Source: Macrostomum lignano
Lineage: Eukaryota
Direction: 5' to 3'
Assembly: GCA_002269645.1 (NCBI GenBank)
Contig: NIVC01000073.1
Location: 558,001 to 622,000 of the forward strand
DNA length: 64,000 nucleotides
Position numbers and translations under genes: made by a program
Part shown: positions 669 through 62,863 of the stretch, in pieces
How positions within the stretch are numbered: position 1 is the first letter of the stretch
Layout of the letters: each line of letters begins with the position of its first letter
Notes under the pieces: generated by a model
Database searches by the model: none
Told to the model about the DNA's origin: nothing
Seen by the model: the letters and a program-made list of their open reading frames with translations, nothing else

Positions 669-15521
<14,853 letters not shown>

Positions 15522-22316: not shown

Positions 22317-29251
<6,935 letters not shown>

Positions 29252-41800: not shown

Positions 41801-44800
41801 AGCAACTGAGGATCTGAGAGGCTGCCCCAGCAACTGAGGATCTGAGAGGCTGGCCCAGCAACTAAGGACAGTTGAAGCCGGCCAAGCCCCAACAAACTCA
41901 CCCGCGCTTAACAAACCGCAGCGTGTACGACCCAGGAGCCAACAGTCTCCAATAGTCGCCATCCTGAGCAGTCAGCACAGCGTGATCAATGCCATCGACC
42001 AGGACGCTAACAGCAGACAAGGGTGCTCCAGTATCGAAGTCCAGCACGAACCCGCGGACGCCCTTGTGCACAGCGGACATGAACACTAACAGGGGGTAGA
42101 AATTCTCAGACCAATACCTGGGCAGCTCGGCAGCGTAGGGATGCTTATTACAGCTGAGCTCTAGCGTCAGTTCAAAGCAGTTCGTATTCAGATAATTGTA
42201 GTCCTGCATGCCGCCGTACAGGCTGTACCACTGGGCCCCGTTAGTGATGCCGTCTGTGAATCGTTCTGTGAGGTAAGCTGGACATCTGTGCTGGCTGGTC
42301 ATCCGGGGGTGACTGCTGGAGTAGGCTCTGGCCAGCTGGCGAAATGTGGCATCGTCTGGAGCTCTGGAATTCACAGTGTTGCGACGCGATCGATCAATTA
42401 TGAAATTTGATGCCATATAGCATTGATCTGTTTGGGTATTATGGCTAATAAGTATTATAAAAATGTAATTTAACTTGATCTTAAGGATTTAAGGATTGCG
42501 TCATAACTCATAAGGAACCAAGGATTGAGTCACAAGAATTCAAGGATTGGGTCATAAAGAATCAAATATTGCGTCATAAGGAACCAAGGATTGGGTCATA
42601 AGAATTCAAGGATTGGGTCATAAGAATTCAAGGATTGGGTCATAAGAATTCAAGGATTGGGTCATAATTAGGAATCTAGGATTGAGTCACAAGAATTCAA
42701 GGATTGGGTCATAAAGAATCAAATATTGCGTCATAAGGAACCAAGGATTGGGTCATAAGAATTCAAGGATTGGGTCATAATTAGGAATCTAGGATTGAGT
42801 CACAAGAATTCAAGGATTGGGTCATAAAGAATCAAATATTGCGTCATAAGGAACCAAGGATTGGGTCATAAGGATTCTGGGAATGAATATGAAGATTTTC
42901 TGTGTCATTCGAATTTAGGGATTGGATCATAGGGATTTTCTGATTAGATTAAAAAACGCTTTTACAAGATTGGTCATAGAAATTTTTCTACTGGTCCTTT
43001 ACGACTACGGCCCGATTACATTCGTATTATAACAATCAAAGCATCGCAGCTTACTTAGAGTAGACGCTAGCGCCCTCCTTGGTGCCGTCGAACGGATAGT
43101 TTGCAACAACGGCGCCGCCGTGCAAATTAGCGCTGAGGACAAACGGCCATCTGAGTATGCGCGAAGGAAGTGAAATATAGAGTTTAAAAAGAAATGCTAT
43201 TATGTCTCGCTTTTACATGTCGTCAAGGTCAATCGGAATTTCTTAAAGTCAAACAATCGGAATTTTCCAAAGTCAAACAATTAGGAGCTTTTAGGGTCAA
43301 ACGATTGAATTTTTCAAAGTCAAACAATTAGGAGCTTTTAGGGTCAAACGATTGAATTTTTCAAAGTCAAATAATCAGAACTTTTGAGGTCAAACAATCT
43401 GATGTTTTATAAGGTCAAAAAATTAATTTTTTTCAAGGTCAAACAGTTGAAATTTTTCAAGGTCAAATAATCGGCATTTTCCAAGGCCAAACAATCGGAA
43501 TTTTACAAGGTCAAACAGTTGGAATTTTCCAAGGTCAAACAATTGGAATTTTCTAAGGTCAAACAATCGGAATTTTACAAGGTCAAACAGTTGGAATTTT
43601 CCAAGGTCAAACAATCGGAATTTTACAAGGTCAAATGATCGGTACTTTTCAAGGTCAAACTATTGGAATTTTTTTAAGGCCAAACAATTTTACTTTTTAA
43701 GGTCAAACAATCGGAATATTCCAAGGTCAAACAATTGGAATTTTCCAAGGTCAAACGCGGAAATTTCCAAGGTCAAACAATCGGGTTTCTCCAAAATTTT
43801 CTCAGGGTATTTCAGGGTATCTCAGATATCTCATCTCAGGTATTTCAGGGTATCTAAGAGTACTTATTTCTAAAAGCTCAGCAAAAACGAAACCCCCTAA
43901 CCTGGCCAGCCAGGCGCGCACAGCCGCAGTCTCCGGCTGCTCCGGTTTCTCGTCCGGTTCGCCGGCGCGAAATTGATCGGGAAAATTTCTATTCAAATCG
44001 ATGCCATTAGCGTTAGACCGGCCAACAACGCCGTTAGAATCGCCAGCATGGGAACTCTCGTATCCGTCTGGGTTCATGCTGGGCATGATGTGCACCCGAG
44101 TGCTGGCCAGCAGATCTTTGACTAACGGAGTTCGGTCGTAATTGCGGCAAAGAAAATCGGCTAAATAAAGAAGCACTTCCCGGCTCACTACTTCGTTGCC
44201 GTGCATGTTGCCAACGTACTTGAATTCGGGTACGCCTGGCAACAGTGAAGTCAAGGTGGGGTGTGCATATATAAGTTGCGAGAATTTCCAATAAAACTTG
44301 AGGAACTTGGAAATTCGCCTATATCAAGATCAAATAAGTTTTTTAGTCCCTATCAAGGTCAAGCTATCTGAAAATCCCCATTGAAGTCAAGTTATTTGGA
44401 ATTCCCCATCAAGATTGAGTTATTTGGAATTCCCCATCAAGATTGAGTTATTTGGAATTCCCCATCAAGATAGAGTTATTTGGAATTACCCATTAAGATT
44501 GAGTTATTTGGAATTCCCCATCAAGATAGAGTTATTTGGAATTCCCCATCAAAGTCAATTAATATGGAATTTCCTATCAAGGTCACGTTTTTTGGAATTC
44601 CCCACCAAGGTCAATTTTTGGAATTTCCCACCAAGGTTATTTTTTTGGAATTTCCTATCAAGGTCAAGTCATTTATAATTATCTAGATAGTTATTATCTA
44701 TCAAGATTAATATAAAAACTCAGTAGGCATATAAAAAATTTAATACTACTACATCGATCGACACTAGCTACCGATATGTATCGAACGGAAAAAAATAACC

Positions 44801-47800
44801 AACGGAGAAAAGGCACAAACCTGGCCTATGCGATCCAGGCAACTGGCCGGAAAACTCAATAACCCACAGTTCTCGATTTTGAACAGATTTTCCAATCGAA
44901 TAAAGGCGAGTCACGCTTGGACAAGCTGAATGAATTCTGTGCAGGTAGGCCGTCAGAGCGTCGTAATTATGGTGCCTGGAGGAAATCCGATTAGTAACGA
45001 TTATTAAGTCAGTATTTGAATATAATACTTAAATTTCGCATTACTGCCCATAGACAGAATTTCTGTTGGCCTCTCTTTAACTGTCTCTCCCTCTACCTGT
45101 CTCCCTCTACCTGTCTCCCTCTACCTGTCTCTCTCTACCTGTCTCTCCCTCTACCTGTCTCTCTCTATCTGTCTCTCTCTACCTGTCTCTCTCCCTCTAC
45201 CTGTCTCTCTCCCTCTACCTGTCTCTCTTCTACCTGTCTCTCCCTCTGCCTGTCTCTCTCCCTCTACCTGTCTCTCTTCTACCTGTCTCTCCCTCTACCT
45301 GTCTCTCTCTACCTGTCTCTCTCTCTACCTGTCTCTCTCTACCTGTCTCTCCCTCTACCTGTCTCTCTCTACCTGTCTCTCTCTACCTGTCTCTCTCTCT
45401 ACCTGTCTCTCTTCTACCTGTCTCTCCCTCTGCCTGTCTCTCTCCCTCTACCTGTCTCTCTTCTACCTGTCTCTCCCTCTACCTGTCTCTCTCTACCTGT
45501 CTCTCTCTACCTGTCTCTCCCTCTGCCTGTCTCTCTTCTACCTGTCTCTCTCTCTCTACCTGTCTCTCTCTACCTGTCTCTCTCTACCTGTCTCTCTCTA
45601 CCTGTCTCTCTTCTACCTGTCTCTCCCTCTGCCTGTCTCTCTCCCTCTACCTGTCCCTCTTCTACCTGTCTCTCCCTCTACCTGTCTCTCTCTACCTGTC
45701 TCTCTCTACCTGTCTCTCCCTCTGCCTGTCTCTCTTCTACCTGTCTCTCTCCCTCTACCTGTCTCTCTCCCTCTACCTGTCATTCTCTACCTACATCTCT
45801 ATCTCTATAAAATAAAAAACAGTAAGCAAACTCACACAAGCGACTTGCTATCAACTGGAACATAGTCTTTGAACACTTTCCGTTCTCGATCTGATCGCAT
45901 TTGATTTGTAAATTTGACAAGCCTCAATATTGGCGAAGATTCGTTCCGCGGGTACTGATCGCCGACACTAAGAATTGAGAAGGCGGATAAAAAACCTATC
46001 AGCAGCATAGCAACTAGTATGTCTCGTCAGCTAATATGTCATCGTTAGTACTCGTAATTCAAAAACATTTTAATTTGAAAATCAGACAAATGCTTATTAT
46101 TAATTCATACTGAAGCATAGATAGTCGCTATACCAGTCATTCTCGTAATCTACTTTGTCATAATATTTAAAAAGCGAAGGACTTACAGACTCTAGATAAA
46201 GTCTGGTATAGTAGTACAATTATGGAAAACAACATATAAGCGAAACTCGATATCAGACAAATGCCTCATTGAAATTTCATAACTGGCACAAACTGAAATT
46301 TGCACCTGTCAATCTCGTCATCTATTCTGTCATCATTAGCGAGTTTATATAAATACTAACTATTCCCTACATTAGAGTCTCGTTCTCAGACAAATGCCTC
46401 ATTAAGATCACGGAGCAGACACTGATTATGCCTGTCAGTTCGTCATCTAAATTGTCATCACTGCTCACACAATGACCTAAAGCACTCTATGTACTTGATA
46501 AGCTCATAAATCATATAAATCTAAGATATAAACTCAGGACTCAGGGCTCAGACAAATGCCTCATTAAATTTCACTAATTGGCACAAACTACTCGAGTTTG
46601 CACCTGTCAATCTCGTCATCTATTGTCATCACAGCGAGTCCGCATAGTCACTAACAATGTGCATTGAGCAATCAAGTCTGTAAGCCGGAATTAACATCCA
46701 CCAGCAGCCAGGCAGCTCTGAAGTCAGCGACAGCTGCAGCGGTGTGCTGTTGCCAGCTGGGTTGCTCTGGCACCAGTATTAAACTTGACCGGGCTTGACA
46801 ACTAATTGCATGGCAACTAGCACCCATTGGTCAAGGGATCAAATCTGGTGCCGTGTGCTTATCTAATTGCATGGCAACTAGCACCCATTGGTCAAGGGAT
46901 CAAATCTGGTGCCGTGTGCTTATCTGATTACATGGCAACTAGCACCCATTGGTCAAGGGATCAAATCTGGTGCCGTGTGCTTATCTAATTGCATGGCAAC
47001 TAGCACCCATTGGTCAAGGGATCAAATCTGGTGCCGTGTGTTTATCTGATTGCATGGCAACTAGCACCCATTGGTCAAGGGATCAAATCTGCTGCCGTGT
47101 GTTTATCTGATTGCATGGCAACTAGCACCAATTGGTCAAGGGATCAAATCTGGTGCCATGTGTTTATCTGATTGCATGGCAACTAGCACCCATTGGTCAA
47201 GGGATCAAATCTGGTGCCGTGTGCTTATCTAATTGCATGGCAACTAGCACCCATTGGTCAAGGGATCAAATCTGGTGCCGTGTGCTTATCTGATTGCATG
47301 GCAACTGGCACCCATTGGTCAAGGAATCAAATCTGGTGCCGTGTGCTTATCTAATTGCATGGCAACTAGCACCCATTGGTCAAGGGATCAAATCTGGTGC
47401 CGTGTGTTTATCTGATTGCATGGCAACTAGCACCCATTGGTCAAGGGATCAAATCTGGTGCCGTGTGCTTATCTGATTGCATGGCAACTAGCACCAATTG
47501 GTCAAGGGATCAAATCTAGTGCCGTATCGCATTTACACTGGTACCCGTTAGTTTTTTATTAGAGACAAGGGCTGTGTGCATCATAGCGCACTTTAAGCGA
47601 CATTGTTACACAACGGGCGAGAAGCATTTTGTCTGTTCCGCTGACCCCCCTGAGCAGGCACACAAGCGCGCGGATACGTACGCAGTCACACGCACATGCA
47701 CACACTCACACAGGAGTGTACAGAGGCCCTAACTTATTTATCGTTAGGCATGTACACTTCACTGCGCCTTCGGGTGGCCCTTAATGCAGGCGTTAATTGC

Positions 47801-50800
47801 ACGAGCAGAGCCAAGCCGAGATTTAAATTTAGCTCTAGTAAATCAATGTGACTGCACTTGGAATCGAGCCTGGGCCGCTGGTACATCAGAGCGCCTGTTA
47901 GGCTACGCCCCAGAGCACTAATTATATTGTTGCCGCGTGTTTATCTACTCCTACTCGTCAGATTGCGTGGCAACTAGCACTCATCGGTGCCATGTGCTTA
48001 TGTAATTGAATAACACCCATTGGTCAAAAGGTATTTAAATCTTCAAGTCAGTGAGACATTCAAGGCACTAGCCATAAAAAAGATTGCATCGAAATCCACG
48101 AAGGTCGAAGGCCCTGAATTTTTTGGTGCATTATTAAGACAGAGACAGTAAAGCTGGTGCCTAACTAAGAACTGAAATTATTTAACATTTCAGGTACAAA
48201 ATTAGTCATACGCTTTTTAAACAAAATCTAGACAGCTTGGTGCTATGATGTATTAGGCAGTAAAATCCTGCTATACGAGTAATACGCTCGCACTTAAGAC
48301 TTCATTCAAAATTAGATACACCGATACTTCATTTTCAGGACAGGTAAGGCTTACTTGTCTTACCAGCTCTCTGACTTAGTTTTAAATTGAAAATCAGACA
48401 AATGCCTCATTATTAATTCATTCTCTGACATAGATAGTCGCTATGCCATTCATTCTCGTCATTTATTTTGTCATCATTTTTATAGAACAAGAATTTACAA
48501 ACTCTACAAACTTTAGTGTGTGTAACAATCACACATTAGGAAAATATAATATCGTGACACTCGCTATCAGACAAATGCCTCATTGAAATTTCATAACTGG
48601 CACAAACTGAAATTTGCACCTGTCAATCTCGTCATCTATTCTGTCATCACAAGCGAGCTAATGATAAAAACTGACTAAACTCATAAGCATTATGCAATAA
48701 GGGTCTCGTTCTCAGACAAATGCCTCATTAAGATCACAGAGCAGACACTGATTATGCCTGTCAGTTCGTCATCTAAATTGTCATCACTGCTCACACAATG
48801 ACCCAAAGAACTCTATGTACTTGATAAGCTCATAAATCATATAAATCTAAGATATATACTCAGGACTCAGGGCTCAGACAAATGCCTCATTAAATTTCAC
48901 TGAATGGCACAAACTACTCGAGTTTGCACCTGTCAATCTCGTCATCTATTGTCATCACAGCGAGTCCGCACAGTCACTAACAATGTGCATTGAGCAATCA
49001 AGTCTGTAAGCCGGAATTAACATCCACCAGCAGCCAGGCAGCTCTGAAGTCAGCGACAGCTGCAGCGGTGTGCTGTTGCCAGCTGGGTTGCTCTGGCACC
49101 AGTATTAAACTTGACCGGGCTTGACAACTAATTGCATGGCAACTAGCACCCATTGGTCAAGGGATCAAATCTGGTGCCGTGTGTTTATCTGATTGCATGG
49201 CAACTAGCACCCATTGGTCAAGGGATCAAATCTGGTGCCGTGTGCTTATCTGATTGCATGGCAACTAGCACCCATTGGTCAAGGGATCAAATCTGGTGCC
49301 GTGTGCTTATCTGATTGCATGGCAACTAGAATTTTAAATAGCGTCTTAAATAAAACGAAGACAACTTGATTTTTTAAGCAGTGAATTTGCTGCACTACTT
49401 ATACTGCTTAATTTATCATTCATACTGAAGCGTAGTTTGTTAGTCGCTATGCCAGTCATTCTCGTCATCTATTTGTATAAGTTACATATAGTTAAATAAA
49501 ACACCCGCTTAGCTGTTTCAACAGTTTTTTGAGAAGGGTGCGTGAACACCCCAGCAGGACTAAAAGCAAGACCTGTAAAAAGGCAAATCACCTCCTTGGA
49601 GCCAACAGCCTTCACACCAATCAGAGAGGAGATAGGCTTCACCGATGGTGATCTTGAGTCTATTGAAACACCGATGAAATGAGAACGACAAGCCAACCAT
49701 GTACCGGGTGGGTTGAGGCCCAGGTCAACAACGGTTGCACTGCCCTTTGAACTCCCCAGAGGATGCAGTGGAAAATGGACTGCTGGAGTGCAAAGTAAGG
49801 GAATAAGACTAGTGAAATTGAACACTATGGTCGGTGGTTGGAATGTGGAATCGCTGCGCCAGGCAAGATGGAGGAAATGCTGGCTGAAGAGATGGCCCGT
49901 ATACACTGGAACATCCTTGACATGTCTGAGATGCGTTGGAAAGGAATCGGTGAAGGACTAAGAGACAGGACACAAAGTTTGGTTATTGTGGCGATGACAA
50001 GGAGGACTTTCGTTCATGGAGTTGAATTTCTTGGTTCACAAAACTCGTAAACACCAAACACTCTATCTTGGAATTTATCCCGGTGAATGACAGAATAGTT
50101 GCAATTAAAGTTACGGGAAAATGTGAAAAGAACAATCCCTAAAGGACGTATTTTTGGTGCAATGGGACAATTAGGGAAAGTTAGACTGGGTGATATCAAC
50201 ATTTTTCAACCACAAAACATTCGGAAAGACAAAATGGCACTCAAAAGATGCAAGAGTTCACAATCAATCTGACTAAAAAATCGTTTCGAGCAGACATGCT
50301 ACCGAAGTGAACAGAATAACGTGAATATTCTATAAACCGGACATTATCAGTGACCATGACTGGCTGATGATGCCATTAAAAGTAAAAATGAAGAAAAACA
50401 AATAAGCAGGATGACGAGAACGTGCTTTGACTTAGGCAAGATGAAGGACAAGAGAATCGTTAAAAATCTTCAAGGAGACTCAGCAAAGCCTAACTTGGTA
50501 TCAAATTGAAAATCAGACAAATGCCTCATTATTAATTCATACTCTGGCATAGATAGTCGCTATGCCGTTCATTCTCGTCATTTATTTTGTCATTTTTCAT
50601 AGAACAAAATTTACAAACTTTAGTGTAATAATCACATATTGGGAAACATAAAATTTTGACACTCGCTATCAGACAAATGCCTCATTGAAATTTCATAACT
50701 GGCACAAACTGAAATTTGCACCTGTCAATCTCGTCATCTATTCTGTCATCATTAGCGAGTTTATATAAATACTAACTATTCCCTACACTAGGGTCTCGTT

Positions 50801-53800
50801 CTCAGACAAATGCCTCATTAAGATCACGGAGCAGACACTGATTATGCCTGTCAGTTCGTCATCTAAATTGTCATCACTGCTCACACAATGACCCAAAGAA
50901 CTCTATGTACTTGGTAAGCTCATAAATCATATAAATCTAAGATATATACTCAGGACTCAGGGCTCAGACAAATGCCTCATTAAATTTCACTAATTGGCAC
51001 AAACTACTCGAGTTTGCACCTGTCAATCTCGTCATCTATTGTCATCACAGCGAGTCCGCACAGTCACTAACAATGTGCATTGAGCAATCAAGTCTGTAAG
51101 CCAGAATTAACATCCACCAGCAGCCAGGCAGCTCTGAAGTCAGCGACAGCTGCAGCGGTGTGCTGTTGCCAGCTGGGTTGCTCTGGCACCAGTATTAAAC
51201 TTGACCGGGCTTGACAACTAATTGCATGGCAACTAGCACCCATTGGTCAAGTATCAAATCTGGTGCCGTGTGCTTATCTAATTGCATGGCAACTAGCACC
51301 CATTAGTCAAGGGATCAAATCTGGTGCCATGTGTTTATCTGATTGCATGGCAACTAGCACCCATTGGTCAAGGGATCAAATCTGGTGCCGTGTGTTTATC
51401 TGATTGCATGGCAACTAGCACCCATTGGTCAAGGGATCAAATCTGGTGCCGTGTGCTTATCTGATTGCATGGCAGCACCCATTGGTCAAGGGATCAAATC
51501 TGGTGCCGTGTGCTTATCTGATTGCATGGCAACTAGAATTTTAAATAGCGTCTTAAATAAAACGAAGACAACTTGATTTTTTAAGCAGTGAATTTGCTGC
51601 ACTACTTATACTGCTTAATTAATCATTCATACTGAAGCGTAGTTTGTTAGTCGCTATGCCAGTCATTCTCGTCATCTATTTGTATAAGTTACATATAGTG
51701 AAATAAAACACCCGCTTAGCTGTTTCAACAGTTTTTTGAGAAGGGTGCGTGAACACCCCAGCAGGACTAAAAGCAAGACCTGTAAAAAGGCAAATCACCT
51801 CCTTGGAGCCAACAGCCTTCACACCAATCAGAGAGGAGATAGGCTTCACCGATGGTGATCTTGAGTCTATTGAAACACCGATGAAATGAGAACGACAAGC
51901 CAACCATGTACCGGGTGGGTTGAGGCCCAGGTCAACAACGGTTGCACTGCCCTTTGAACTCCCCAGAGGATGCAGTGGAAAATGGACTGCTGGAGTGCAA
52001 AGTAAGGGAATAAGACTAGTGAAATTGAACACTATGGTCGGTGGTTGGAATGTGGAATCGCTGCGCCAGGCAAGATGGAGGAAATGCTGGCTGAAGAGAT
52101 GGCCCGTATACACTGGAACATCCTTGACATGTCTGAGATGCGTTGGAAAGGAATCGGTGAAGGACTAAGAGACAGGACACAAAGTTTGGTTATTGTGGCG
52201 ATGACAAGGAGGACTTTCGTTCATGGAGTTGAATTTCTTGGTTCACAAAACTCGTAAACACCAAACACTCTATCTTGGAATTTATCCCGGTGAATGACAG
52301 AATAGTTGCAATTAAAGTTACGGGAAAATGTGAAAAGAACAATCCCTAAAGGACGTATTTTTGGTGCAATGGGACAATTAGGGAAAGTTAGACTGGGTGA
52401 TATCAACATTTTTCAACCACAAAACATTCGGAAAGACAAAATGGCACTCAAAAGATGCAAGAGTTCACAATCAATCTGACTAAAAAATCGTTTCGAGCAG
52501 ACATGCTACCGAAGTGAACAGAATAACGTGAATATTCTATAAACCGGACATTATCAGTGACCATGACTGGCTGATGATGCCATTAAAAGTAAAAATGAAG
52601 AAAAACAAATAAGCAGGATGACGAGAACGTGCTTTGACTTAGGCAAGATGAAGGACAAGAGAATCGTTAAAAATCTTCAAGGAGACTCAGCAAAGCCTAA
52701 CTTGGTATCAAATTGAAAATCAGACAAATGCCTCATTATTAATTCATACTCTGGCATAGATAGTCGCTATGCCGTTCATTCTCGTCATTTATTTTGTCAT
52801 TTTTCATAGAACAAAATTTACAAACTTTAGTGTAATAATCACATATTGGGAAACATAAAATTTTGACACTCGCTATCAGACAAATGCCTCATTGAAATTT
52901 CATAACTGGCACAAACTGAAATTTGCACCTGTCAATCTCGTCATCTATTCTGTCATCATTAGCGAGTTTATATAAATACTAACTATTCCCTACACTAGGG
53001 TCTCGTTCTCAGACAAATGCCTCATTAAGATCACGGAGCAGACACTGATTATGCCTGTCAGTTCGTCATCTAAATTGTCATCACTGCTCACACAATGACC
53101 CAAAGAACTCTATGTACTTGGTAAGCTCATAAATCATATAAATCTAAGATATATACTCAGGACTCAGGGCTCAGACAAATGCCTCATTAAATTTCACTAA
53201 TTGGCACAAACTACTCGAGTTTGCACCTGTCAATCTCGTCATCTATTGTCATCACAGCGAGTCCGCACAGTCACTAACAATGTGCATTGAGCAATCAAGT
53301 CTGTAAGCCAGAATTAACATCCACCAGCAGCCAGGCAGCTCTGAAGTCAGCGACAGCTGCAGCGGTGTGCTGTTGCCAGCTGGGTTGCTCTGGCACCAGT
53401 ATTAAACTTGACCGGGCTTGACAACTAATTGCATGGCAACTAGCACCCATTGGTCAAGTATCAAATCTGGTGCCGTGTGCTTATCTAATTGCATGGCAAC
53501 TAGCACCCATTAGTCAAGGGATCAAATCTGGTGCCATGTGTTTATCTGATTGCATGGCAACTAGCACCCATTGGTCAAGGGATCAAATCTGGTGCCGTGT
53601 GCTTATCTAATTGCATGGCAACTGGCACCCATTGGTCAAGGGATCAAATCTGGTGCCGTGTGCTTATCTAATTGCATGGCAACTAGCACCTATTGGTCAA
53701 GGGATCAAATCTGGTGCCGTGTGCTTATCTAATTGCATGGCAACTAGCACCTATTGGTCAATAGTCCACCAGTCCAGCTTATCTTTGACATTTCTAGTTA

Positions 53801-54583
53801 GATTGTTAAAGTCTTTATATTAAAAAAAAGACAAACTTTATTCCCAATGGAGGGACAAAAAGAACTTCAGTTGTGCAGCTTCGCTTACCTGACGTCTCGT
53901 CGCAATCTCAGTCCGTATTCATGGTCATCAGCCAGGCCTCCCGAGTTGATAAACTGCCATTGCAAGTAATTAGTCAAATTAAACGCCCGATGCTTCGCTT
54001 TCAACGCGCCGCTTCGATGGCAATTGTCTATGGTAATAATCGATTTAACCTTGCAGCCATTGTCAGCAAGATTGTTAACAAACTGTTCAACTAACTCAGG
54101 CTGTTCGCTTAAATCTTTTTCGCAGGCAAGAATTTGACATATTCGCTTCTTAGTTATGGATTCATAACCGACCAAGTCTAATTGACGCAATGCTTTTAAA
54201 ACGTTTGTATTGTTGCTCCTAGTTGGTAGTAGAAATTCAGCAACAATTTTACTCCTTGTCGATGTTGAAGATGGCAAATTAATAAAGTCTTTTAGTAGCA
54301 CCAGTTGCTTAGCAACTGAACTAGCAGCAGCTTGACTAGTCGCTGCGTAGGTTAATATCAGCATTGGTTTGACTGACACCTGATCAGCGCTATTATCGCT
54401 GATTGATAACCGATAAATATTAACATCTTCGATGTTACTGATTGCGAATCTTGGCTGAGTTGCAACATTTTCAGCTAATAATAACGTCACCTGTGATAGC
54501 CGCAACAACAGAATTGTCAGCATTATAAGCCATCGGTTGCCATGGAAACGGGAAAGACGATTGGCATTTGAATTTGGCAGCAT
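32863..54583 (-). CDS. CPD: Carboxypeptidase D-like multidomain M14B metallocarboxypeptidase, type I membrane protein, about 1517 aa
   Basis: Exons 54583-53889, 45967-45836, 44975-44821, 44235-43902, 43150-43055, 42363-41902, 40500-40127, 39462-38990, 37729-37615, 37052-36602, 35342-34661, 33837-33516, 33125-32863; total 4554 nt, in frame. Domain 1 has [43 protein letters not shown] and FELTLELSC. Three transthyretin-like subdomains ([26 protein letters not shown]), a TM segment and a YSKV tail follow. Linkage of the first exon is inferred. Confidence 0.85.
33170..33480. repeat. 23-bp minisatellite
   Basis: CCCAATCAGCCTCACTTTCAGTG. Confidence 0.92.
34030..34555. repeat. 35-bp minisatellite
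   Basis: ATAATAGGATCACTAATTAAGGGATTAACACCAGA. Confidence 0.9.
35365..35850. repeat. 25-bp minisatellite
   Basis: GGGTTCAGGGGCGATTCTTCAGGTA. Confidence 0.92.
36110..36545. repeat. Degenerate G-rich GGGTCAATTAGA repeat
   Basis: Direct reading. Confidence 0.75.
37185..37540. repeat. 28-bp minisatellite (reverse complement of the 21770 family)
   Basis: CAGCAACTGACACTCTGGGAGGCTGGCC. Confidence 0.9.
37785..38965. repeat. 19-27-bp minisatellite
   Basis: GATCTGGGGATTCTATTGA units. Confidence 0.92.
39560..40105. repeat. About 85-bp degenerate tandem repeat
   Basis: GGGGGTCAAATGACCTCC...AGCAGTTAATAA units. Confidence 0.75.
40560..41870. repeat. 28-bp minisatellite (about 46 copies; same family as 21770 and 37185)
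   Basis: CAGCAACTGA(GGATC/CACTC)TGGGAGGCTGGCC. Confidence 0.95.
42480..42880. repeat. 22-bp minisatellite
   Basis: CAAGGATTGGGTCATAAGAATT. Confidence 0.85.
43230..43790. repeat. 24-bp minisatellite
   Basis: AAGGTCAAACAATCGGAATTTTCC. Confidence 0.85.
44300..44670. repeat. 28-bp minisatellite
   Basis: GGAATTCCCCATCAAGATTGAGTTATTT. Confidence 0.8.
45075..45800. repeat. CT-rich minisatellite (about 16-18 bp)
   Basis: CTACCTGTCTCTCCCT units. Confidence 0.9.
46082..46164 (-). pseudogene. U15-like box C/D snoRNA, type A, degenerate (cassette 1)
   Basis: D box is present, but both guides are mutated (plus strand caaatgcttatt, ctcgtaatct) and the C box reads ATTATGA. Confidence 0.65.
46253..46336 (-). 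ncRNA. SNORD15: U15-like dual-guide box C/D snoRNA, type B (cassette 1)
   Basis: Minus strand: C ATGATGA, guide TAGATGACGAG, D' TTGA, guide GAGGCATTTG, D CTGA, terminal stem. Confidence 0.85.
46386..46461 (-). ncRNA. SNORD15: U15-like box C/D snoRNA, type C (cassette 1)
   Basis: C GTGATGA, guide TTAGATGACGA, D' CTGA, C' GTGATCT, guide GAGGCATTTG, D CTGA. Confidence 0.85.
46548..46632 (-). ncRNA. SNORD15: U15-like box C/D snoRNA, type D (cassette 1)
   Basis: C GTGATGA, guide TAGATGACGAG, D' TTGA, guide GAGGCATTTG, D CTGA. Confidence 0.85.
46804..47525. repeat. 61-bp minisatellite (about 12 copies), cassette 1
   Basis: Unit ATTGCATGGCAACTAGCACCCATTGGTCAAGGGATCAAATCTGGTGCCGTGTGCTTATCT(A/G). 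Confidence 0.92.
47530..47912 (-). mobile_element. Candidate tRNA-derived SINE inserted in a 61-bp repeat array
   Basis: Minus-strand head TGGGGCGTAGCCTAACAGG (A-box-like) ... GGCTCGATTCC (B-box-like, 47870-47860); degenerate 61-bp units resume after it (about 47930-48035). Confidence 0.5.
48394..48477 (-). ncRNA. SNORD15: U15-like box C/D snoRNA, type A (cassette 2)
   Basis: C ATGATGA, D' guide with one mismatch (TAAATGACGAG), D' ATGA, intact D guide and CTGA. Confidence 0.78.
48567..48650 (-). ncRNA. SNORD15: U15-like box C/D snoRNA, type B (cassette 2)
   Basis: All boxes and both guides intact; C GTGATGA. Confidence 0.85.
48712..48787 (-). ncRNA. SNORD15: U15-like box C/D snoRNA, type C (cassette 2)
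   Basis: Same boxes and guides as 46386-46461. Confidence 0.85.
48874..48958 (-). ncRNA. SNORD15: U15-like box C/D snoRNA, type D (cassette 2)
   Basis: Same boxes and guides as 46548-46632. Confidence 0.85.
49130..49330. repeat. 61-bp minisatellite, cassette 2
   Basis: Same unit, about 3 copies. Confidence 0.9.
49820..50450 (+). pseudogene. Decayed RTE-like LINE AP-endonuclease fragment
   Basis: Frameshifted motifs GWNVESL / [20 protein letters not shown] / [14 protein letters not shown] / [14 protein letters not shown] / FDLGKMKD. Confidence 0.72.
50513..50596 (-). pseudogene. U15-like snoRNA, type A, C box damaged (cassette 3)
   Basis: D box and D guide intact; plus strand reads tgtcattttt instead of tgtcatcatttt, so the C box is lost. 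Confidence 0.65.
50669..50752 (-). ncRNA. SNORD15: U15-like box C/D snoRNA, type B (cassette 3)
   Basis: All boxes and guides intact; perfect ACTCGCTA/TAGCGAGT terminal stem. Confidence 0.87.
50802..50877 (-). ncRNA. SNORD15: U15-like box C/D snoRNA, type C (cassette 3)
   Basis: Boxes and guides as in the other type C copies. Confidence 0.85.
50964..51048 (-). ncRNA. SNORD15: U15-like box C/D snoRNA, type D (cassette 3)
   Basis: Boxes and guides as in the other type D copies. Confidence 0.85.
51220..51535. repeat. 61-bp minisatellite, cassette 3
   Basis: Same unit, about 5 copies. Confidence 0.9.
52027..52657 (+). pseudogene. Decayed RTE-like LINE endonuclease fragment (duplicate)
   Basis: Same sequence at +2207. 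Confidence 0.72.
52720..52803 (-). pseudogene. U15-like snoRNA, type A, C box damaged (cassette 4)
   Basis: Copy of 50513-50596 at +2207. Confidence 0.65.
52876..52959 (-). ncRNA. SNORD15: U15-like box C/D snoRNA, type B (cassette 4)
   Basis: Copy of 50669-50752 at +2207. Confidence 0.85.
53009..53084 (-). ncRNA. SNORD15: U15-like box C/D snoRNA, type C (cassette 4)
   Basis: Copy of 50802-50877 at +2207. Confidence 0.85.
53171..53255 (-). ncRNA. SNORD15: U15-like box C/D snoRNA, type D (cassette 4)
   Basis: Copy of 50964-51048 at +2207. Confidence 0.85.
53427..53760. repeat. 61-bp minisatellite, cassette 4
   Basis: Same unit, about 5-6 copies. Confidence 0.9.
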
Positions 54584-55079
54584 GTCCCTTTATGTATTAC
54601 GATGCGTGCATGCAAAAAGCACTCTAGATGGAATGTAGCTCGAAGATATTCTGAAATGTCAAAGTATAAAAAGTAATTGATAGTTCAGAAATTATCATTC
54701 TACAGAAAAGTAACTAACTAAAAAAATTACTATTATTACAGACATCTAATACTAAAAGCTAATGGGACATTTTTATAATTACTGACACTCAATAGTTTTA
54801 AGGCACTCACTGACACCTAACACTTTACAAGTTAAATGTACCCTAAATAATAATAAAAATATAATATGTTCTGTGCTATACTAAAACCGAAATCATTAGT
54901 AAATTAAACAACCCACCATTTGAACGATGATATTAAAATAGCGGCAAATGTCCTTTTACCCGATACAAATGGTATTTTTTATTTATTCATAATAGGAAAA
55001 AGTTTACAAGTCGTTAAAAAAGTCGCTTGAGTAAGAGAAAAATTAACCTTGAAAACTAGATTCATAATAATTTTTGCAA

Positions 55080-55490
55080 CACTGAGGATCTGGGAGGCTT
55101 GCCCAGCAACTGAGGATCTGGGAGGCTTGCCCAGCAACTGAGGATCTGGAAGGCTGGCCCAGCAACTGAGGATCTCGAAGGCTGGCCCAGCAACTGAGGA
55201 TCTGGGAGGCTGGCTCAGCAACTGAGGATCTGGGAGGCTTGCCCAGCAACTGAGGATCTGGGAGGCTGGCTCAGCAACTGAGGATCTGGGAGGCTTGCCC
55301 AGCAACTGAGGATCTGGGAGGCTGGCTCAGCAACTGAGGATCTCGAAGGCTGGCCCAGCAACTGAGGATCTGGGAGGCTGGCTCAGCAACTGAGGATCTG
55401 GGAGGCTTGCCCAGCAACTGAGGATCTGGAAGGCTTGCCCAGCAACTGAGGATCTGGAAAGCTGGCCCAGCAACTGAGGATCTGGAAGAA
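55080..55490. repeat. 28-bp minisatellite (same family as 40560)
   Basis: CAGCAACTGAGGATCTGGGAGGCT(G/T)GC(C/T). Confidence 0.9.
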
Positions 55491-56255
55491 ATACAATTTG
55501 TTTTGCCGTTCAAAGACGTAACAAAGACGTTCTAGTAGACTCCAAATGGATTTTAACTAATTTGCATCAGATTGCATAATAGCTACTACAAAATGGCGCA
55601 AGGCAAAAGTTTTAATATACGTAAATTCGGATCACTTTAGTACAAAAATACTCTAACTACTACTTGTTACTATTAGTAGTACGAGTATTACTAATTGATT
55701 TAAAGTATGCAAGCAATATAAACTGGGACAGCGAAGTTGCACCCGGGTAGCGAGAGTAATAAAATGCGGCAAGCAGAAACACCTACTGGATAATATTTAA
55801 TAAATTGAACAGGTGTGGCAGAGGTACAAAAAGTACAGTTTGTTTACATAAATCTTTATTTAAAAAACTTTGCAAAGTAATGTTTGAAAAAAATTGACGG
55901 TATTATTATAAATAAATGTGAAGACAGCAACGGGTTACTAAAAAGAAATTAATGCCTTACTTCCATACGACACACTTTTACAATAATAGAACTTACATGT
56001 ATAGCCATGTTTATATTATAACTGAATAAATCACAGACTATATTCAACACAAAGACCATTTTTAACACAAAGACCCTATAAAGCACAGACTCCACCCTAC
56101 TCAACACTAAGACCCTACTCAACACAAAGACCCAAGTTATATTCAAAGAAGTGCACCGGGAACCAGGGGAATTTAAAGTTCGCGCATTTAAGTCAGGTCA
56201 ATAAAAAACGGACACAACGAACATGATCAGATAGACTGAGATGCAATCTCGGCAT

Positions 56256-59104
56256 TCAATGAGAGATCTCTGGCACCGGATTCTCGTACAGAGGATCAAA
56301 ATGAAGCAGGAGAAAAGCTACAGCGCCAATCAGAGCCAGGGCTAGAATGCAGTTGAGCAGAGACGGACGAAACCGACTGGGAGCTGCGGCGGCTCCTGGG
56401 GCCGGACGAGCGCCAGACGGCGAGCCCACGTTACCATAGTAACCAGTTCCGGCGTCATTCTCGTGCAACGGGCGTCGGCGATAGGTTTCGCGGAAAACTG
56501 AACCGCCACCGCTGCCGAAGCTGCCATCGTCGGCTGGTGAAGCTCCGGGACGTTGAGGAGGGGAATCGAACCTGCGACCTGCTGGGCTGGATGCGGCAGC
56601 GGCGGCTGCGCCTGCGGCGGAGAATATCGAAGCGTCGCGAGTGCCCGGACTGCGAATAAACAATGGGAAAGACTGGTTGGGCAAAATTACACTGATAAGT
56701 ACTTGTTAGCTAAAGTACACTGACAAAGATTTGTTTGTAAATGTACATAGAAAAAGTCTGAATTGCCCAATGTACACTGACAAAGACTCAATGGCCAATG
56801 TACACTGCCAAAGCCTCAATGGCCAAATATACACTAACAAAGACTCAATGGCCCAATGTACACTGAAAAAGACTCAATGGCCCAATATACACTGACAAAA
56901 AGAATCAATGGTTGAATGTACACTCAAAAAGACTCAATGGCACAATGTACACTCAAAAAGACTCAATGGCACAATGTACACTCAAAAAGACTCAATGGCA
57001 CAATGTACACTGACATACTCAATACTCCAATGTACACCAACAGAAAAAGTTATATCTTTAAATACTTGTTAAGAATCTCAAAAAGCTACCTGTTGTAAAC
57101 TCAAACAAATAGCCAAAACTGAAAATGTTCATAAATAACATTTTTATTCCAGCACCGAAAAAACTTATACATAATAATATAATCGCTGATAACCATTACC
57201 AACTAGAATTTTCCTACCAAATAGCTATAGTGACAGGAACACAGCAGTCACAGATAGTAATGTTGATCGACAAGTCGTACTTTAAATTAGATGGCCTGTG
57301 TGGTTGTTCAATCAGATTCTTTACGTTTTTACTGATAATTAAGGTGAGAAAAGTGCAAAATATTCTACTCTTAAAGTAACAATATTTAAAGACACCAACC
57401 AATTTCCTATATATTATGAGTTTCACACATCCCAAGTAGTAAAGTTGAGTTCAATAAAACAAACGATTTATTACCTTACTGGCTGTCTTCTGGCGCCGTC
57501 TCCGTCACTGACATCGCTTTCGCTAAAAAATACAATAAGTATTATTTATATTTATAACTCTCCATAATAAATCAATAATGGAATGAAAATCCATAGAATA
57601 TACAATAAATTAAGCTTTTGGACTCAGACAAATGCCTCATTAAGATCACTTTATAAAGGCAAAAGTTATGCCTGTATCAGTTCGTCATCTAAATTGTCAT
57701 CATTGTAGTTTAGGCTATTATCAAACATAAAATATCGCGACACTCGCTATCAGACAAATGCCTCATTGAAATTTCATAACTGGCACAAACTGAAATTTGC
57801 ACCTGTCAATCTCGTCATCTATTCTGTCATCATTAGCGAGTTTATATAAATACTAACTATTCCCTACACTAGGGTCTCGTTCTCAGACAAATGCCTCATT
57901 AAGATCACGGAGCAGACCTGATTATGCCTGTCAGTTCGTCATCTAAATTGTCATCACTGCTCACACAATGACCCAAAGAACTCTATGTACTTGGTAAGCT
58001 CATAAATCATTTAAATCTAAGATATATACTCAGGACTCAGGGCTCAGACAAATGCCTCATTAAATTTCACTAATTGGCACAAACTACTCGAGTTTGTACC
58101 TGTCAATCTCGTCATCTATTGTCATCACAGCGAGTCCGCACAGTCACTAACAATGTGCATTGAGCAATCAAGTCTGTAAGCCGGAATTAACATCCACCAG
58201 CAGCCAGGCAGCTCTGAAGTCAGCGACAGCTGCAGCGGTGTGCTGTTGCCAGCTGGGTTGCTCTGGCACCAGCATTAAACTTGACCGGGCTTGACAACTA
58301 ATTGCATGGCAACTAGCACCCATTGGTCAAGGGATCAAATCTGGTGCCGTGTGCTTATCTAATTGCATGGCAACTAGCACCCATTGGTCAAGAGATCAAA
58401 TCTGGTGCCGTGTGCTTATCTAATTGCATGGCAACTAGCACCCATTGGTCAAGGGATCAAATCTGGTGCCATGTGTTTATCTGATTGCATGGCAACTAGC
58501 ACCCATTGGTCAAGGGATCAAATCTGGTGCCATGTGTTTATCTGATTGCATGGCAACTAGCACCCATTGGTCAAGGGATCAAATCTGGTGCCATGTGTTT
58601 ATCTGATTGCATGGCAACTAGCACTTATTGGTGCTAGGGGTCGAATCTGAGTGATTATTCAGCATATTAAGCTGCATGGCAACTAAGCGGACTAAGACTA
58701 GGACTAAGACTTAACCAATGGGATAAAGACAACCCTACTATAATTACTAGTTTAAATCCTGCCTCAAAATCAGACAAATGCCTTATAAAAATTCACATTA
58801 AAAAGCATAGATTTATTTGCTATGCCAATCATACTCGTCATCTATTTTGTCATCATTTTTGAGAGCAGATTTTTTGCACAAAAAGAATCAAATCCTTGAG
58901 TTGTAAATAAAACAACACTTACCTATCTTCAGCTTGGTCGTTGCTGCACACAGACACAAACTGTTGTCCGGAGCGCAGTCTATATAATTTACGACGCATC
59001 AAGTGCCTAGTAGTGTCAGTAACTGGGGGCACATTTGCGTCGCCCATGTGTACAGCAAGTTCATCGCGTAGTTCCGCATCATTTAGTTGATTAATTTCGT
59101 CCAT
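56256..59104 (-). CDS. LEM-domain inner nuclear membrane protein (emerin/LAP2-like), about 207 aa
   Basis: Exons 59104-58923, 57522-57475, 56649-56256; phases are consistent. N-terminal LEM motif (LNDAELRDELAVHMGDANVPPVTDTTRHLMRRKLYRL), low-complexity middle, C-terminal TM segment (LLNCILALALIGAVAFLLLHF). Confidence 0.85.
56770..57010. repeat. About 28-bp minisatellite in LEM intron 2
   Basis: CAATGTACACTCAAAAAGACTCAATGGC. Confidence 0.85.
57624..57703 (-). ncRNA. SNORD15: U15-like box C/D snoRNA, type E (C-like variant; cassette 5, LEM intron 1)
   Basis: C ATGATGA, guide TTAGATGACGA, D' CTGA, C' GTGATCT, guide GAGGCATTTG, D CTGA; the internal spacer differs from type C. Confidence 0.85.
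57750..57833 (-). ncRNA. SNORD15: U15-like box C/D snoRNA, type B (cassette 5)
   Basis: All boxes and guides intact; 8-bp terminal stem. Confidence 0.87.
57883..57957 (-). ncRNA. SNORD15: U15-like box C/D snoRNA, type C (cassette 5)
   Basis: Boxes and guides intact. Confidence 0.85.
58044..58128 (-). ncRNA. SNORD15: U15-like box C/D snoRNA, type D (cassette 5)
   Basis: Boxes and guides intact. Confidence 0.85.
58300..58630. repeat. 61-bp minisatellite, cassette 5
   Basis: Same unit, about 5 copies. Confidence 0.9.
58770..58856 (-). ncRNA. SNORD15: U15-like box C/D snoRNA, type A variant (LEM intron 1)
   Basis: C ATGATGA, guide TAGATGACGAG, D' ATGA, D guide AGGCATTTG, D CTGA; CTCAAAA/TTTTGAG terminal stem. 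Confidence 0.82.
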
Positions 59105-61897: not shown

Positions 61898-62863
61898 ATG
61901 TCTATTGCCAGCAGTCGTGCTTCAATGGCACCACCTGACGATGGTGCTGGAGCAGGAGCTGAGGAACCGGTACTAGGCGAACGTCTTGATCGTCTCGCTG
62001 ATGCACTGGAGCGCCAGCTTGGTATAGGCCAAGTCAGGCAGCATGTCAAGATGGCTAAATACACGCCATCCCAAGACATCCGCACGTGGATCAAAGCCTT
62101 CGATCTTCGCTGCGATACCGAAGACATTCGTGCCTGCCACAGGAAGGCGGAGTTGCTCGCCAACCTTGACGTGCACACGGCGTATGCTTCGGTCTTGCGC
62201 CTGAATTTGCCAGATCATCTGGATTATGAAGAGTTTAAGGAAGCGCTGATTGAGAGATTCTCAAAGAGAGGCGGCTCACAGGAATTCCGAGAAGATTTCC
62301 GCTGCCGAACTCAGCGCAAGAACGAGGACATTGACGAGTTTGCAGATGCTCTCCGCGAACTTGGAGAACTCGCTTATCCTTATCTCTTGCCAGCTCAGCT
62401 CGAATCAGAACTTGTTGATCAGTTCCTGAAAGGTGTCAGAACTACAATTGAGGCGAGAGAACGGCTGTACTGGGGTCGTCCAGAGACTCTACAGGACGCC
62501 AAGTTCGCCTTCAAGCGCATCGAGACAGCGCGTGAGCTTGCTGCCCGCAGTAAAGACGCACCCTGTCGCAGCCTGGGTGGGGACAAAGCTACGGTTCCCC
62601 GACAGGACGATGAGCTTAAGAATCTAATCAGGCATCAGAATGAGGTTCTGCAGAAGCAGCAGCAGATGCTTGAGCAGCTTCTCAAGCAGACGCCAGCCGC
62701 ACCTGTCAGAGATAGGCTGCAAGGCATTGTGTGCCACGAGTGCGGCAAACCAGGCCACAAGAGGCCTGACTGTCCTAAGTTCAAGGCTCAGAAGCCGGGA
62801 AACGTCCGGGCGGGGGTTGCCAACCAGGACCCTCTCCAGGGCCAACCCCCGAAGTCGCACTAA
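61898..62863 (+). CDS. gag: Ty3/Gypsy gag (capsid-like domain + CCHC zinc knuckle)
   Basis: 321-aa ORF with a retrotransposon gag-like core (QRKNEDIDEFADALRELGELAYP..LVDQFLKG) and the knuckle CHECGKPGHKRPDC. Confidence 0.9.
   Translation: MSIASSRASMAPPDDGAGAGAEEPVLGERLDRLADALERQLGIGQVRQHVKMAKYTPSQDIRTWIKAFDLRCDTEDIRACHRKAELLANLDVHTAYASVLRLNLPDHLDYEEFKEALIERFSKRGGSQEFREDFRCRTQRKNEDIDEFADALRELGELAYPYLLPAQLESELVDQFLKGVRTTIEARERLYWGRPETLQDAKFAFKRIETARELAARSKDAPCRSLGGDKATVPRQDDELKNLIRHQNEVLQKQQQMLEQLLKQTPAAPVRDRLQGIVCHECGKPGHKRPDCPKFKAQKPGNVRAGVANQDPLQGQPPKSH

What the first reader, a model, noticed from the sequence alone, without database searches (positions are those of the whole stretch)
46386..57957. 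Type C/E paralogues have a D' guide shifted by one nucleotide: predicted new methylation site
Seen: types A, B and D read TAGATGACGAG-N-D', so position +5 is C and pairs with the G. Types C and E read TTAGATGACGA-A-CTGA, so +5 is A and pairs with the next U (yeast U2289-equivalent); the duplex gains a base at the distal end and stays at 11 bp. Inference: duplication followed by neofunctionalisation to methylate the adjacent nucleotide, preserved in all six C/E copies.
Basis: inference. Interest (0 to 1): 0.75.

Follow-up and report, generated by a model that had tools for sequence, protein, structure and literature searches.

The report
Flatworm snoRNA copies with shifted guide
In a flatworm (Macrostomum lignano) gene cluster of small RNAs that direct methylation of ribosomal RNA, six copies have lost one base next to a guide sequence, which by the standard spacing rule should move the methyl mark to the neighbouring U; this is a plausible but untested example of a well-known way for such RNAs to evolve.

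Summary
The window is Macrostomum lignano contig NIVC01000073.1. Its minus strand carries 21 full and 2 truncated copies of a dual-guide box C/D snoRNA of the U15 / snR75+snR13 type. They lie in intron 1 of a LEM-domain gene and intron 1 of the neighbouring carboxypeptidase D gene.

All copies keep a D guide for the A2281-equivalent (yeast numbering). Sixteen full copies keep the eukaryote-wide register GACGAG-N-NUGA, which puts the G2288-equivalent at +5; four of these are decayed. Six copies (five "gamma", one "epsilon") read UUAGAUGACGA-A-CUGA. That is one base fewer before D', one extra distal pair, still 11 bp, and the next U at +5.

The boxes of the six copies are intact, and their C'/D' pair is the most canonical in the family. 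Gamma and epsilon differ at 1 of 53 box and guide positions but at about half of the spacer positions.

Three caveats apply:
- The five gamma copies sit in 97–99.8 % identical recent duplications, so only two lineages are independent.
- Epsilon has no terminal stem and gamma's is displaced.
- No expression or methylation data, and no related genome, could be reached.

This U is not methylated in the published maps I read for fly, human, yeast, plants and Dictyostelium. It is a new variant of a known kind. My confidence that the U is actually methylated is about 0.5, and interest is modest.

The parts
Box C GUGAUGA, D' guide UUAGAUGACGA, +1 A, D' CUGA, C' UGAUCU, D guide AUGAGGCAUUUG, D CUGA.
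53009..53084 (-). gamma copy, tandem unit U1 in carboxypeptidase D intron 1. The D' guide UUAGAUGACGA is at 53073-53063, the +5 nucleotide (A) at 53066 and the D' box CUGA at 53061-53058.
50802..50877 (-). gamma copy, tandem unit U2. It is identical to the U1 copy.
48712..48787 (-). gamma copy, tandem unit U3. It has one C-to-U change, located in the spacer hairpin.
46386..46461 (-). gamma copy, tandem unit U4.
It has the same shifted D' guide, D' box, C' box and D guide as gamma, but a different spacer hairpin and unrelated flanks. No terminal stem was found.
58044..58128 (-). alpha copy with the canonical register GACGAG-A-UUGA (G at +5), in LEM intron 1. Further alpha copies are at 53255-53171, 51048-50964, 48958-48874 and 46632-46548.
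57750..57833 (-). beta copy with the canonical register and a 7-8 bp terminal stem, in LEM intron 1. Further beta copies are at 52959-52876, 50752-50669, 48650-48567 and 46336-46253.
58770..58856 (-). delta' copy with the canonical register GACGAG-U-AUGA and an 8 bp terminal stem. It gives the best Rfam scores in the cluster (snoMe28S-Am2589 29.2 bits, snR75 24.1 bits). Decayed delta copies are at 52801-52720, 50594-50513, 48477-48394 and 46163-46082. Truncated copies lie near 51690 and 49483.
56256..59104 (-). Host gene 1, a LEM-domain protein of 207 aa (BOX15_Mlig005543g1). Exons are at 59104-58923, 57522-57475 and 56649-56256. Intron 1 carries delta', a 61-bp satellite, then alpha, gamma, beta and epsilon, all in sense orientation.
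44835..54583 (-). Host gene 2, carboxypeptidase D. Exon 1 runs from 54583 to about 53890 and exon 2 from about 44975 to 44835. Intron 1 carries four tandem units (61-bp satellite, alpha, gamma, beta, delta) in sense orientation.

Best explanation
Gamma and epsilon are intron-encoded, dual-guide box C/D snoRNAs of the U15 / snR75+snR13 type. They arose by duplication inside a local snoRNA cluster of Macrostomum lignano. Their D guide still places the conserved Am on the A2281-equivalent.

One G between the D' antisense element and the D' box has been lost, and an A-to-U change has extended pairing by one base at the far end. The result is an 11-bp duplex with 28S rRNA in which the U immediately 3' of the conserved Gm occupies position +5. 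This U is the yeast U2289-equivalent, the second base pair of helix 71.

Fibrillarin bound at the C'/D' motif would therefore 2'-O-methylate that U. The alpha, beta and delta' paralogues continue to methylate the G.

Shown here: the sequence anatomy, the register, the integrity of the boxes, the sense intronic location and the pattern of conservation. Inferred: expression, snoRNP assembly, the M. lignano 28S sequence at this site, and the methylation itself.
For: (1) The register shift is exact and present in all six copies. Rfam consensus sequences of yeast snR75, plant SNOR75, Tetrahymena TtnuCD10 and Plasmodium snoR21 all read GAUGACGAG-N-NUGA, and Dictyostelium DdR15 carries the same UAGAUGACGAG element. 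Gamma and epsilon therefore depart from a register conserved across eukaryotes.

(2) The fifth nucleotide upstream of D/D' sets the methylated position (PMC8522698).

(3) Gamma and epsilon have the most canonical internal motifs of the family: D' CUGA and C' UGAUCU. Alpha and beta have UUGA with UGAAAU, and delta has AUGA.

(4) The lost proximal pair is replaced by a new distal pair, so the duplex stays at 11 bp over +2 to +12 (direct reading).

(5) Gamma and epsilon differ at 1 of 53 box and guide positions, and that difference is R to R in RUGAUGA. They differ at about 13 of 27 spacer positions, and their flanks are unrelated. Fisher's test gives 7e-7 overall. For the D' guide plus D' box alone (0 of 19 differences) it gives 2e-4.

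(6) Each paralogue type keeps a hairpin between D' and C' built from different sequence.

(7) Among the five alpha-gamma-beta blocks, the six variable sites inside snoRNAs all avoid guides and box cores (five are in the D'-C' spacer and one is the first, R, position of a C box). In the same arrays the delta copies have lost their C boxes, so decay is visible on this timescale.

(8) All copies lie in sense orientation within introns of two protein-coding genes.
Against: - No expression or methylation data exist, and none could be reached with these tools.
- The five gamma copies are very recent duplicates. U1 and U2 are 99.8 % identical over about 2.1 kb. Their identity therefore says nothing about selection.
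- The spacer difference between gamma and epsilon could come from one or two replacement events rather than many substitutions. The Fisher values are therefore generous.
- Epsilon has no terminal stem. Gamma has only a stem displaced about 11 nt from box C, whereas beta, alpha and delta' have good stems.
- In the minimum-energy folds the shifted D' guide pairs with the C' region, and the GA of D' is drawn into the spacer hairpin.
- Sequence-based predictions often fail. Of 75 predicted Drosophila sites, 31 were not confirmed. Some snoRNAs with good complementarity do not modify endogenous rRNA.
- No map read here reports this U as methylated: D. melanogaster, a review table covering plants, human, yeast and two further columns I could not identify, and Dictyostelium.
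- The D' change could be tolerated simply because the copies are still needed, or are redundant, for the D guide.
Confidence: 0.5

Rival explanations
1. Gamma and epsilon are expressed and functional, but only through their D guide (the Am at the A2281-equivalent). The shifted D' element is a tolerated, inactive or very inefficient variant, so no new methylated site exists. The G is served by the ten alpha and beta copies and by delta'.
For: All 17 undecayed copies carry a D guide for the same A, identical in 16 and one pair shorter in delta', which alone could explain why the RNAs are kept. Predicted guides frequently do not act on endogenous rRNA. The U is unmodified in every published map read here. 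The D' guide can pair internally with the C' region.
Against: A neutral D' element would be expected to drift. Instead the guide and D' box are identical between gamma and epsilon, while the adjacent spacer is about 50 % different. The C'/D' boxes are the best in the family. The distal compensating pair keeps the duplex at 11 bp.
Confidence: 0.27
2. Gamma and epsilon are unexpressed or unstable pseudogene copies, carried along in a recently amplified satellite-plus-snoRNA repeat. The shift is simply a deletion in a dead copy.
For: The cluster sits in a repeat-rich region with 61-bp satellites and near-identical 2.1-2.2 kb tandem units. The neighbouring delta copies are clearly decaying or truncated. 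Epsilon lacks a terminal stem and gamma's is displaced. No Rfam family reaches its gathering score.
Against: All four boxes are intact and canonical in all six copies, and no box or guide substitution occurs in any of them. Gamma and epsilon have diverged in spacer and flanks but not in functional blocks. They share introns with well-formed alpha and beta copies, so they are transcribed whenever the host genes are.
Confidence: 0.18
3. Gamma and epsilon still direct methylation of the G, which is now at +4, or they act on another nucleotide or another RNA altogether.
For: Some guides methylate two adjacent nucleotides; yeast snR13 gives Am2280 and Am2281 (PMC4174444).
Against: The +5 rule is described as exact. 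No alternative NUGA motif lies one base further downstream that would restore G to +5; the next tetramer is UGAC. The 11-bp match to the helix 71 strand is perfect. As far as I recall, methylation at +4 has not been described.
Confidence: 0.05

Closest known systems
Yeast snR75 (Gm2288) and snR13 (Am2280/Am2281)
   Same: The two antisense elements are the same. UAGAUGACGAG sits upstream of D' (snR75 consensus UAGAUGACGAG-U-CUGA). GAGGCAUUUG sits upstream of D and targets the A that lies 7 nt 5' of the G. The target region is H70/H71 of domain IV (PMC4174444).
   Different: In yeast the two guides are on separate RNAs; here they are on one RNA. Gamma and epsilon have one base fewer before D', so U rather than G is at +5. 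Rfam scores are below gathering (24.1 bits against 40).
Vertebrate SNORD15 (U15A/B) and plant U15 / SNOR75
   Same: U15 is listed as the homologue of snR75 in human and Arabidopsis (PMC2780460). AtU15 is assigned to both the Am and the Gm. The plant SNOR75 consensus carries both GAUGACGAG-U-CCGA and GAGGCAUUUGUCUGA, the same dual-guide design.
   Different: Those RNAs keep the canonical register. Human U15 sits one per intron in a ribosomal-protein gene (from memory). Here several copies share one intron of a LEM-domain gene and one intron of a carboxypeptidase D gene. Scores are far below gathering (SNORD15 20 bits against 75, SNOR75 21 against 50).
Tetrahymena TtnuCD10, Plasmodium snoR21 and Dictyostelium DdR15
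   Same: These give the best-scoring Rfam alignments. TtnuCD10 and snoR21 carry the same two guides in the same order, with the canonical GAUGACGAG-N-AUGA register, exactly as in delta'. DdR15 shares the D' element UAGAUGACGAG.
   Different: All scores are 26-31 bits against gathering scores of 70-90, so the resemblance is confined to the boxes and guides. None shows the shifted register.
Drosophila snoRNA:CD7 (Gm2666) and CD51a-c (Am2659, formerly Me28S-A2589a-c)
   Same: They target the same two positions, 7 nt apart, and both sites are conserved in all six species compared. snoMe28S-Am2589 is the Rfam family closest to its gathering score here (29.2 bits against 37).
   Different: The fly uses separate RNAs for the two sites, and no Um is reported at 2667.
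snoRNA isoforms that predict new methylation sites after gene duplication (plants)
   Same: The evolutionary mode is the same: local duplication of C/D snoRNA genes yields isoforms whose altered guides predict new rRNA sites. See Barneche et al. 2001, J Mol Biol 311:57, cited in PMC2780460.
   Different: Here the new site is produced purely by a one-base change of register against an unchanged target strand, next to a universally conserved Gm, and in a flatworm.

Membership tests
Box C/D snoRNA (2'-O-methylation guide) | Box C (RUGAUGA) near the 5' end and box D (CUGA) near the 3' end | tested here: met
   Gamma has GUGAUGA ... CUGA and epsilon has AUGAUGA ... CUGA, in all six copies.
Box C/D snoRNA (2'-O-methylation guide) | Internal D' and C' boxes | tested here: met
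   D' is CUGA and C' is UGAUCU, separated by a spacer hairpin.
Box C/D snoRNA (2'-O-methylation guide) | Antisense element of at least 10 nt ending next to D or D', complementary to rRNA | tested here: met
   The D' element gives 11 bp at +2 to +12. The D element gives 10 Watson-Crick pairs plus G·U and A-U. Both were tested against the universally conserved H70/H71 sequence; the M. lignano 28S itself was not available.
Box C/D snoRNA (2'-O-methylation guide) | Terminal stem that brings boxes C and D together | tested here: inconclusive
   Beta and delta' have 7-8 bp stems, and alpha has a stem close to the boxes. Gamma has only a 9-bp stem displaced about 11 nt from box C. Epsilon has none.
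Box C/D snoRNA (2'-O-methylation guide) | Stable expressed RNA bound by fibrillarin, Nop56, Nop58 and Snu13 | not testable with these tools
   No RNA-seq or immunoprecipitation data are reachable.
U15 / snR75 family (guide for the Gm at the base of H71) | D' guide places the G2288-equivalent at +5 (GACGAG-N-NUGA) | tested here: not met
   Gamma and epsilon read GACGA-A-CUGA, so the G is at +4 and the U at +5. Alpha, beta and delta' do meet this feature.
U15 / snR13 family (guide for the Am in H70) | D guide places the A2281-equivalent at +5 (GAGGCAUUUG-U-CUGA) | tested here: met
   The D guide is identical in all alpha, beta, gamma and epsilon copies.
Rfam families SNORD15, snR75, SNOR75, snoMe28S-Am2589, TtnuCD10, plasmodium_snoR21 | Covariance-model score at or above the curated gathering threshold | tested here: not met
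   There are no matches at gathering. The best scores are 29.2 against 37, 24.1 against 40, 21 against 50, 20 against 75, 31 against 85 and 30 against 90.

The most novel reading that the evidence does not exclude
Macrostomum lignano ribosomes carry a lineage-specific 2'-O-methyl-U directly next to the universally conserved Gm at the base of helix 71, which forms intersubunit bridge B3. It would be installed by register-shifted U15/snR75 paralogues. No map read here reports that position as modified, and this would show a new rRNA modification site created by a single-base deletion in a guide RNA.
Probability: 0.45. Interest if true: 0.4.

Novelty: new variant of a known kind. Interest (0 to 1): 0.3.

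Why it matters
If the U is methylated, this is a clean natural example of how the set of rRNA modifications grows. A guide RNA is duplicated, one base is lost next to the D' box, and a new methyl group appears beside an old one, with the intermediate paralogues still sitting side by side.

The site lies in helix 71. In yeast, loss of the neighbouring Gm together with m5C2278 destabilises the 60S subunit (PMC4174444). An extra methyl group there could therefore affect ribosome stability.

It would also be the first guide-to-site assignment in domain IV of a flatworm 28S rRNA. The only flatworm RiboMeth-seq study found lists 28S sites only up to position 1600.

If the U is not methylated, the locus is just one more variant copy in a repeat-rich snoRNA cluster.

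Tried and rejected
1. Rfam at gathering thresholds gave no hit. Only sub-threshold matches appeared at E-value cut-offs. I used them for their consensus guide sequences, not as proof of membership.

2. Comparative genomics failed.
   - The LEM host protein has a single match in 5.8 billion proteins, namely itself.
   - It maps to a single contig.
   - No orthologous locus from another Macrostomum species or another flatworm could therefore be fetched.

Only two had a C-box-like motif upstream, none had the D guide, and the one locus with two matches is not a snoRNA. This was a dead end.

4. Literature searches found little.
   - No paper covers Macrostomum snoRNAs.
   - No paper names a Um at the equivalent position under the six species-specific position names I tried.
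   - The planarian RiboMeth-seq study does not reach domain IV.
   - The zebrafish paper's main text gave nothing usable.

5. The conserved ~170-nt segment upstream of each alpha copy was folded as a possible further non-coding RNA. It folds no better than shuffled sequence (z = -0.85).

6. I looked for an alternative D' box that would restore G to +5. None exists; the next tetramer is UGAC.

7. I rejected copy number as evidence of selection, because the units are 97-99.8 % identical including their intergenic DNA.
Full report
**Source of the window.** A spliced open reading frame on the minus strand encodes a 207-aa LEM-domain protein with a C-terminal membrane anchor. Its exons are at 59104-58923, 57522-57475 and 56649-56256. 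The protein is 100 % identical to BOX15_Mlig005543g1 of Macrostomum lignano and is the only match in the protein collection. It maps to contig NIVC01000073.1 of assembly GCA_002269645.1. The window is therefore nuclear DNA of a free-living flatworm. By my coordinate arithmetic it covers bases 558001-622000 of that contig.

**What is in the region.** TAGATGACGA occurs 19 times, all on the minus strand, against 0.04 expected. Reading the minus strand shows 21 full-length and 2 truncated copies of one box C/D snoRNA design:
- box C (RUGAUGA);
- an antisense element containing AGAUGACGA;
- a D' box (NUGA);
- a spacer hairpin;
- a C' box;
- a second antisense element (AUGAGGCAUUUG);
- box D (CUGA).

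I call the sequence classes alpha, beta, gamma and delta (5 copies each) and epsilon (1 copy).

**Genomic arrangement.**
- Intron 1 of the LEM gene holds delta', a 61-bp satellite, then alpha, gamma, beta and epsilon.
- The next gene downstream on the same strand is carboxypeptidase D. Its exon 1 runs from 54583 to about 53890 and exon 2 from about 44975 to 44835.
- Intron 1 of that gene holds four tandem units, each made of satellite, alpha, gamma, beta and delta.
- All copies are in sense orientation within introns.

**Targets of the canonical copies.** The D element GAGGCAUUUG-U-CUGA pairs with CAAAUGCCUC of domain IV of 28S rRNA and puts the third A at +5. The D' element UAGAUGACGAG-N-NUGA pairs with CUCGUCAUCUA and puts the G, 7 nt further 3', at +5.

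These are the yeast sites Am2281 (snR13) and Gm2288 (snR75) in H70/H71 (PMC4174444). The same pair of sites, 7 nt apart, is mapped in:
- Drosophila, Am2659 and Gm2666;
- Arabidopsis, Am2282 and Gm2289;
- human, Am3785 and Gm3792;
- Dictyostelium, Am2547 and Gm2554.

No Rfam family reaches its gathering score. The sub-threshold alignments are still informative. The consensus sequences of yeast snR75, plant SNOR75, Tetrahymena TtnuCD10 and Plasmodium snoR21 all read GAUGACGAG-N-NUGA, and Dictyostelium DdR15 carries the same UAGAUGACGAG element. SNOR75, TtnuCD10 and snoR21 also carry the GAGGCAUUUG D guide. The dual-guide design and its register are therefore ancient, and alpha, beta and delta' conform to them.

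**The observation.** GAUGACGAACUGA occurs exactly six times: five gamma copies and epsilon. They read CAAUUUAGAUGACGA-A-CUGA.
- MAFFT places a one-base gap opposite the last G of GACGAG.
- cmscan places the same deletion against SNOR75.
- Counting from D': +1 is A (mismatch), +2 A-U2286, +3 G-C2287, +4 C-G2288 and +5 A-U2289, continuing to +12 U-A2296.
- In alpha and beta the pairs run from +2 G-C2285 to +12 U-A2295.
- Both registers give 11 pairs. The pair lost next to D' is replaced by a distal pair created by an A-to-U change.

One correction applies. The delta copies in the carboxypeptidase D intron do not carry the intact 11-mer: they read UAAAUGACGAG or UAGAUUACGAG. Three of the four have damaged C boxes.

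**Evidence that gamma and epsilon are working genes.**
- All four boxes are intact in all six copies.
- Their D' (CUGA) and C' (UGAUCU) are closer to consensus than those of alpha and beta (UUGA with UGAAAU) or delta (AUGA).
- Gamma and epsilon differ at 1 of 53 positions in boxes and guides, a G/A at the R of RUGAUGA. About 13 of 27 spacer positions differ and the flanks are unrelated. Fisher's test gives 7e-7 overall, and 2e-4 for the D' guide plus D' box alone.
- Each class keeps a hairpin between D' and C' built from different sequence.
- Across the five alpha-gamma-beta blocks, the six variable sites inside snoRNAs all avoid guides and box cores: five are in the D'-C' spacer and one is the first, R, position of a C box.

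**Evidence against, or neutral.**
- The five blocks are 97-99.8 % identical including intergenic DNA. The five gamma copies therefore count as one lineage, and "preserved in six copies" reduces to two.
- The gamma/epsilon spacer difference may come from very few replacement events.
- Beta and delta' have 7-8 bp terminal stems, and alpha has one close to the boxes. Gamma has only a 9-bp stem displaced about 11 nt from box C, and epsilon has none.
- In the predicted folds the shifted guide can pair with the C' region.

**Mechanism.** In box C/D snoRNPs exactly the fifth nucleotide upstream of D or D' fixes the methylated position (PMC8522698). From memory, the classical experiments of Kiss-László et al. 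1996 and Cavaillé et al. 1996 showed that changing the spacing moves the site.

The prediction follows: gamma and epsilon should direct 2'-O-methylation of the U next to the conserved Gm and keep directing the Am through their D guide. By complementarity of GUCA with UGAC, that U is the second base pair of helix 71. Its base carries the Gm, and the helix forms bridge B3.

The step from sequence to modification is inference. In Drosophila 31 of 75 predicted sites were not confirmed. Some guides with good pairing do not modify endogenous rRNA.

**Is the site known elsewhere?**
- The Drosophila map shows nothing at this U.
- The same is true of a review table covering plants, human, yeast and two further columns I could not identify.
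- The same is true of the Dictyostelium table.
- A full-text search for six species-specific position names of this Um found nothing relevant.
- The only flatworm RiboMeth-seq study lists 28S sites only up to position 1600 and so does not reach domain IV.
- No paper on Macrostomum snoRNAs was found.

**Comparison and novelty.** Duplicated snoRNA isoforms that predict new sites have been described in plants since 2001 (Barneche et al., cited in PMC2780460). The kind of event is therefore known.

What is specific here is a pure register shift against an unchanged target strand, next to a universally conserved Gm, with canonical and shifted paralogues side by side. I rate it a new variant of a known kind.

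My confidences are:
- 0.5 that the U is methylated;
- 0.27 that the RNAs work only through the D guide;
- 0.18 that they are dead copies;
- 0.05 for another target or continued methylation of the G.

Interest is modest (0.3). It is a sound, cheap-to-test prediction in a laboratory flatworm rather than a surprise.

**What could not be done.** No related genome, no M. lignano rRNA sequence and no RNA data were reachable. The decisive tests are listed separately.

Noticed in passing
window 46805-47525, 49131-49329, 51221-51536, 53425-53761, 58298-58649: A 61-bp satellite (consensus ATTGCATGGCAACTAGCACCCATTGGTCAAGGGATCAAATCTGGTGCCGTGTGCTTATCTG, 3-12 copies, 93-99 % matches) precedes every alpha-gamma-beta block, in both host introns. 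Satellite and snoRNAs seem to have been amplified together as one unit.
   Followed up: partly
window 52801-52720, 50594-50513, 48477-48394, 46163-46082; truncated copies near 51690 and 49483: The delta-class copies in the carboxypeptidase D intron are decaying. Their C boxes read AAUGACA or UUAUGACA, their guides have mismatches (UAAAUGACGAG, UAGAUUACGAG, AAUAAGCAUUUG), and two copies lack box C and the D guide altogether. They serve as an internal contrast to the intact alpha, beta and gamma copies.
   Followed up: partly
window 51700-52720 and 49490-50513 (minus strand): A ~1.0-kb insert lies between the delta copy and the truncated delta copy in units U1 and U2. It contains a 145-aa ORF (51676-52113 and 49469-49906). 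I did not examine its origin.
   Followed up: no
window 53009-53084 and 57624-57703 (minus strand): In gamma and epsilon the shifted D' guide (AUU.AGAU.ACG) is complementary to the C' box region and the start of the D guide (CGU.AUCU.AAU). This gives a predicted internal helix around the spacer hairpin. Whether it matters is unknown.
   Followed up: no
window 45974-46047 (minus strand): There is a weak snR75-like match (20.7 bits). The sequence CGAUGACAUAUUAGCUGACGAGACAUA looks like one more degenerate copy at the distal end of the array.
   Followed up: no
window 55081-55485; also 40475-41962, 37130-37756, 21765-22229: A 28-bp minisatellite (ACTGAGGATCTGGGAGGCTGGCCCAGCA) lies downstream of the LEM gene. 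Related arrays elsewhere in the window give long spurious ORFs ([17 protein letters not shown]...). One of these arrays sits within the span of the carboxypeptidase D gene.
   Followed up: no
window 61898-62863 (+): A 321-aa ORF carries a CCHC zinc knuckle (CHECGKPGHKRPDC) and looks like a retrotransposon Gag. It was not examined further.
   Followed up: no
window 53262-53445 and the equivalent segment in each unit: A ~170-nt segment between the satellite and alpha is conserved among the units. It gave weak mir-191 hits, but it folds no better than shuffled sequence (z = -0.85), so there is no evidence for a further RNA gene.
   Followed up: yes
window 25904-28170 (+) and 10600-15521 (+): Exon-like ORFs resemble an S-adenosylhomocysteine-hydrolase-like protein and a leucine-rich-repeat / immunoglobulin-domain membrane protein with long polyglutamine tracts. 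Many simple-sequence repeats occur throughout the window.
   Followed up: no
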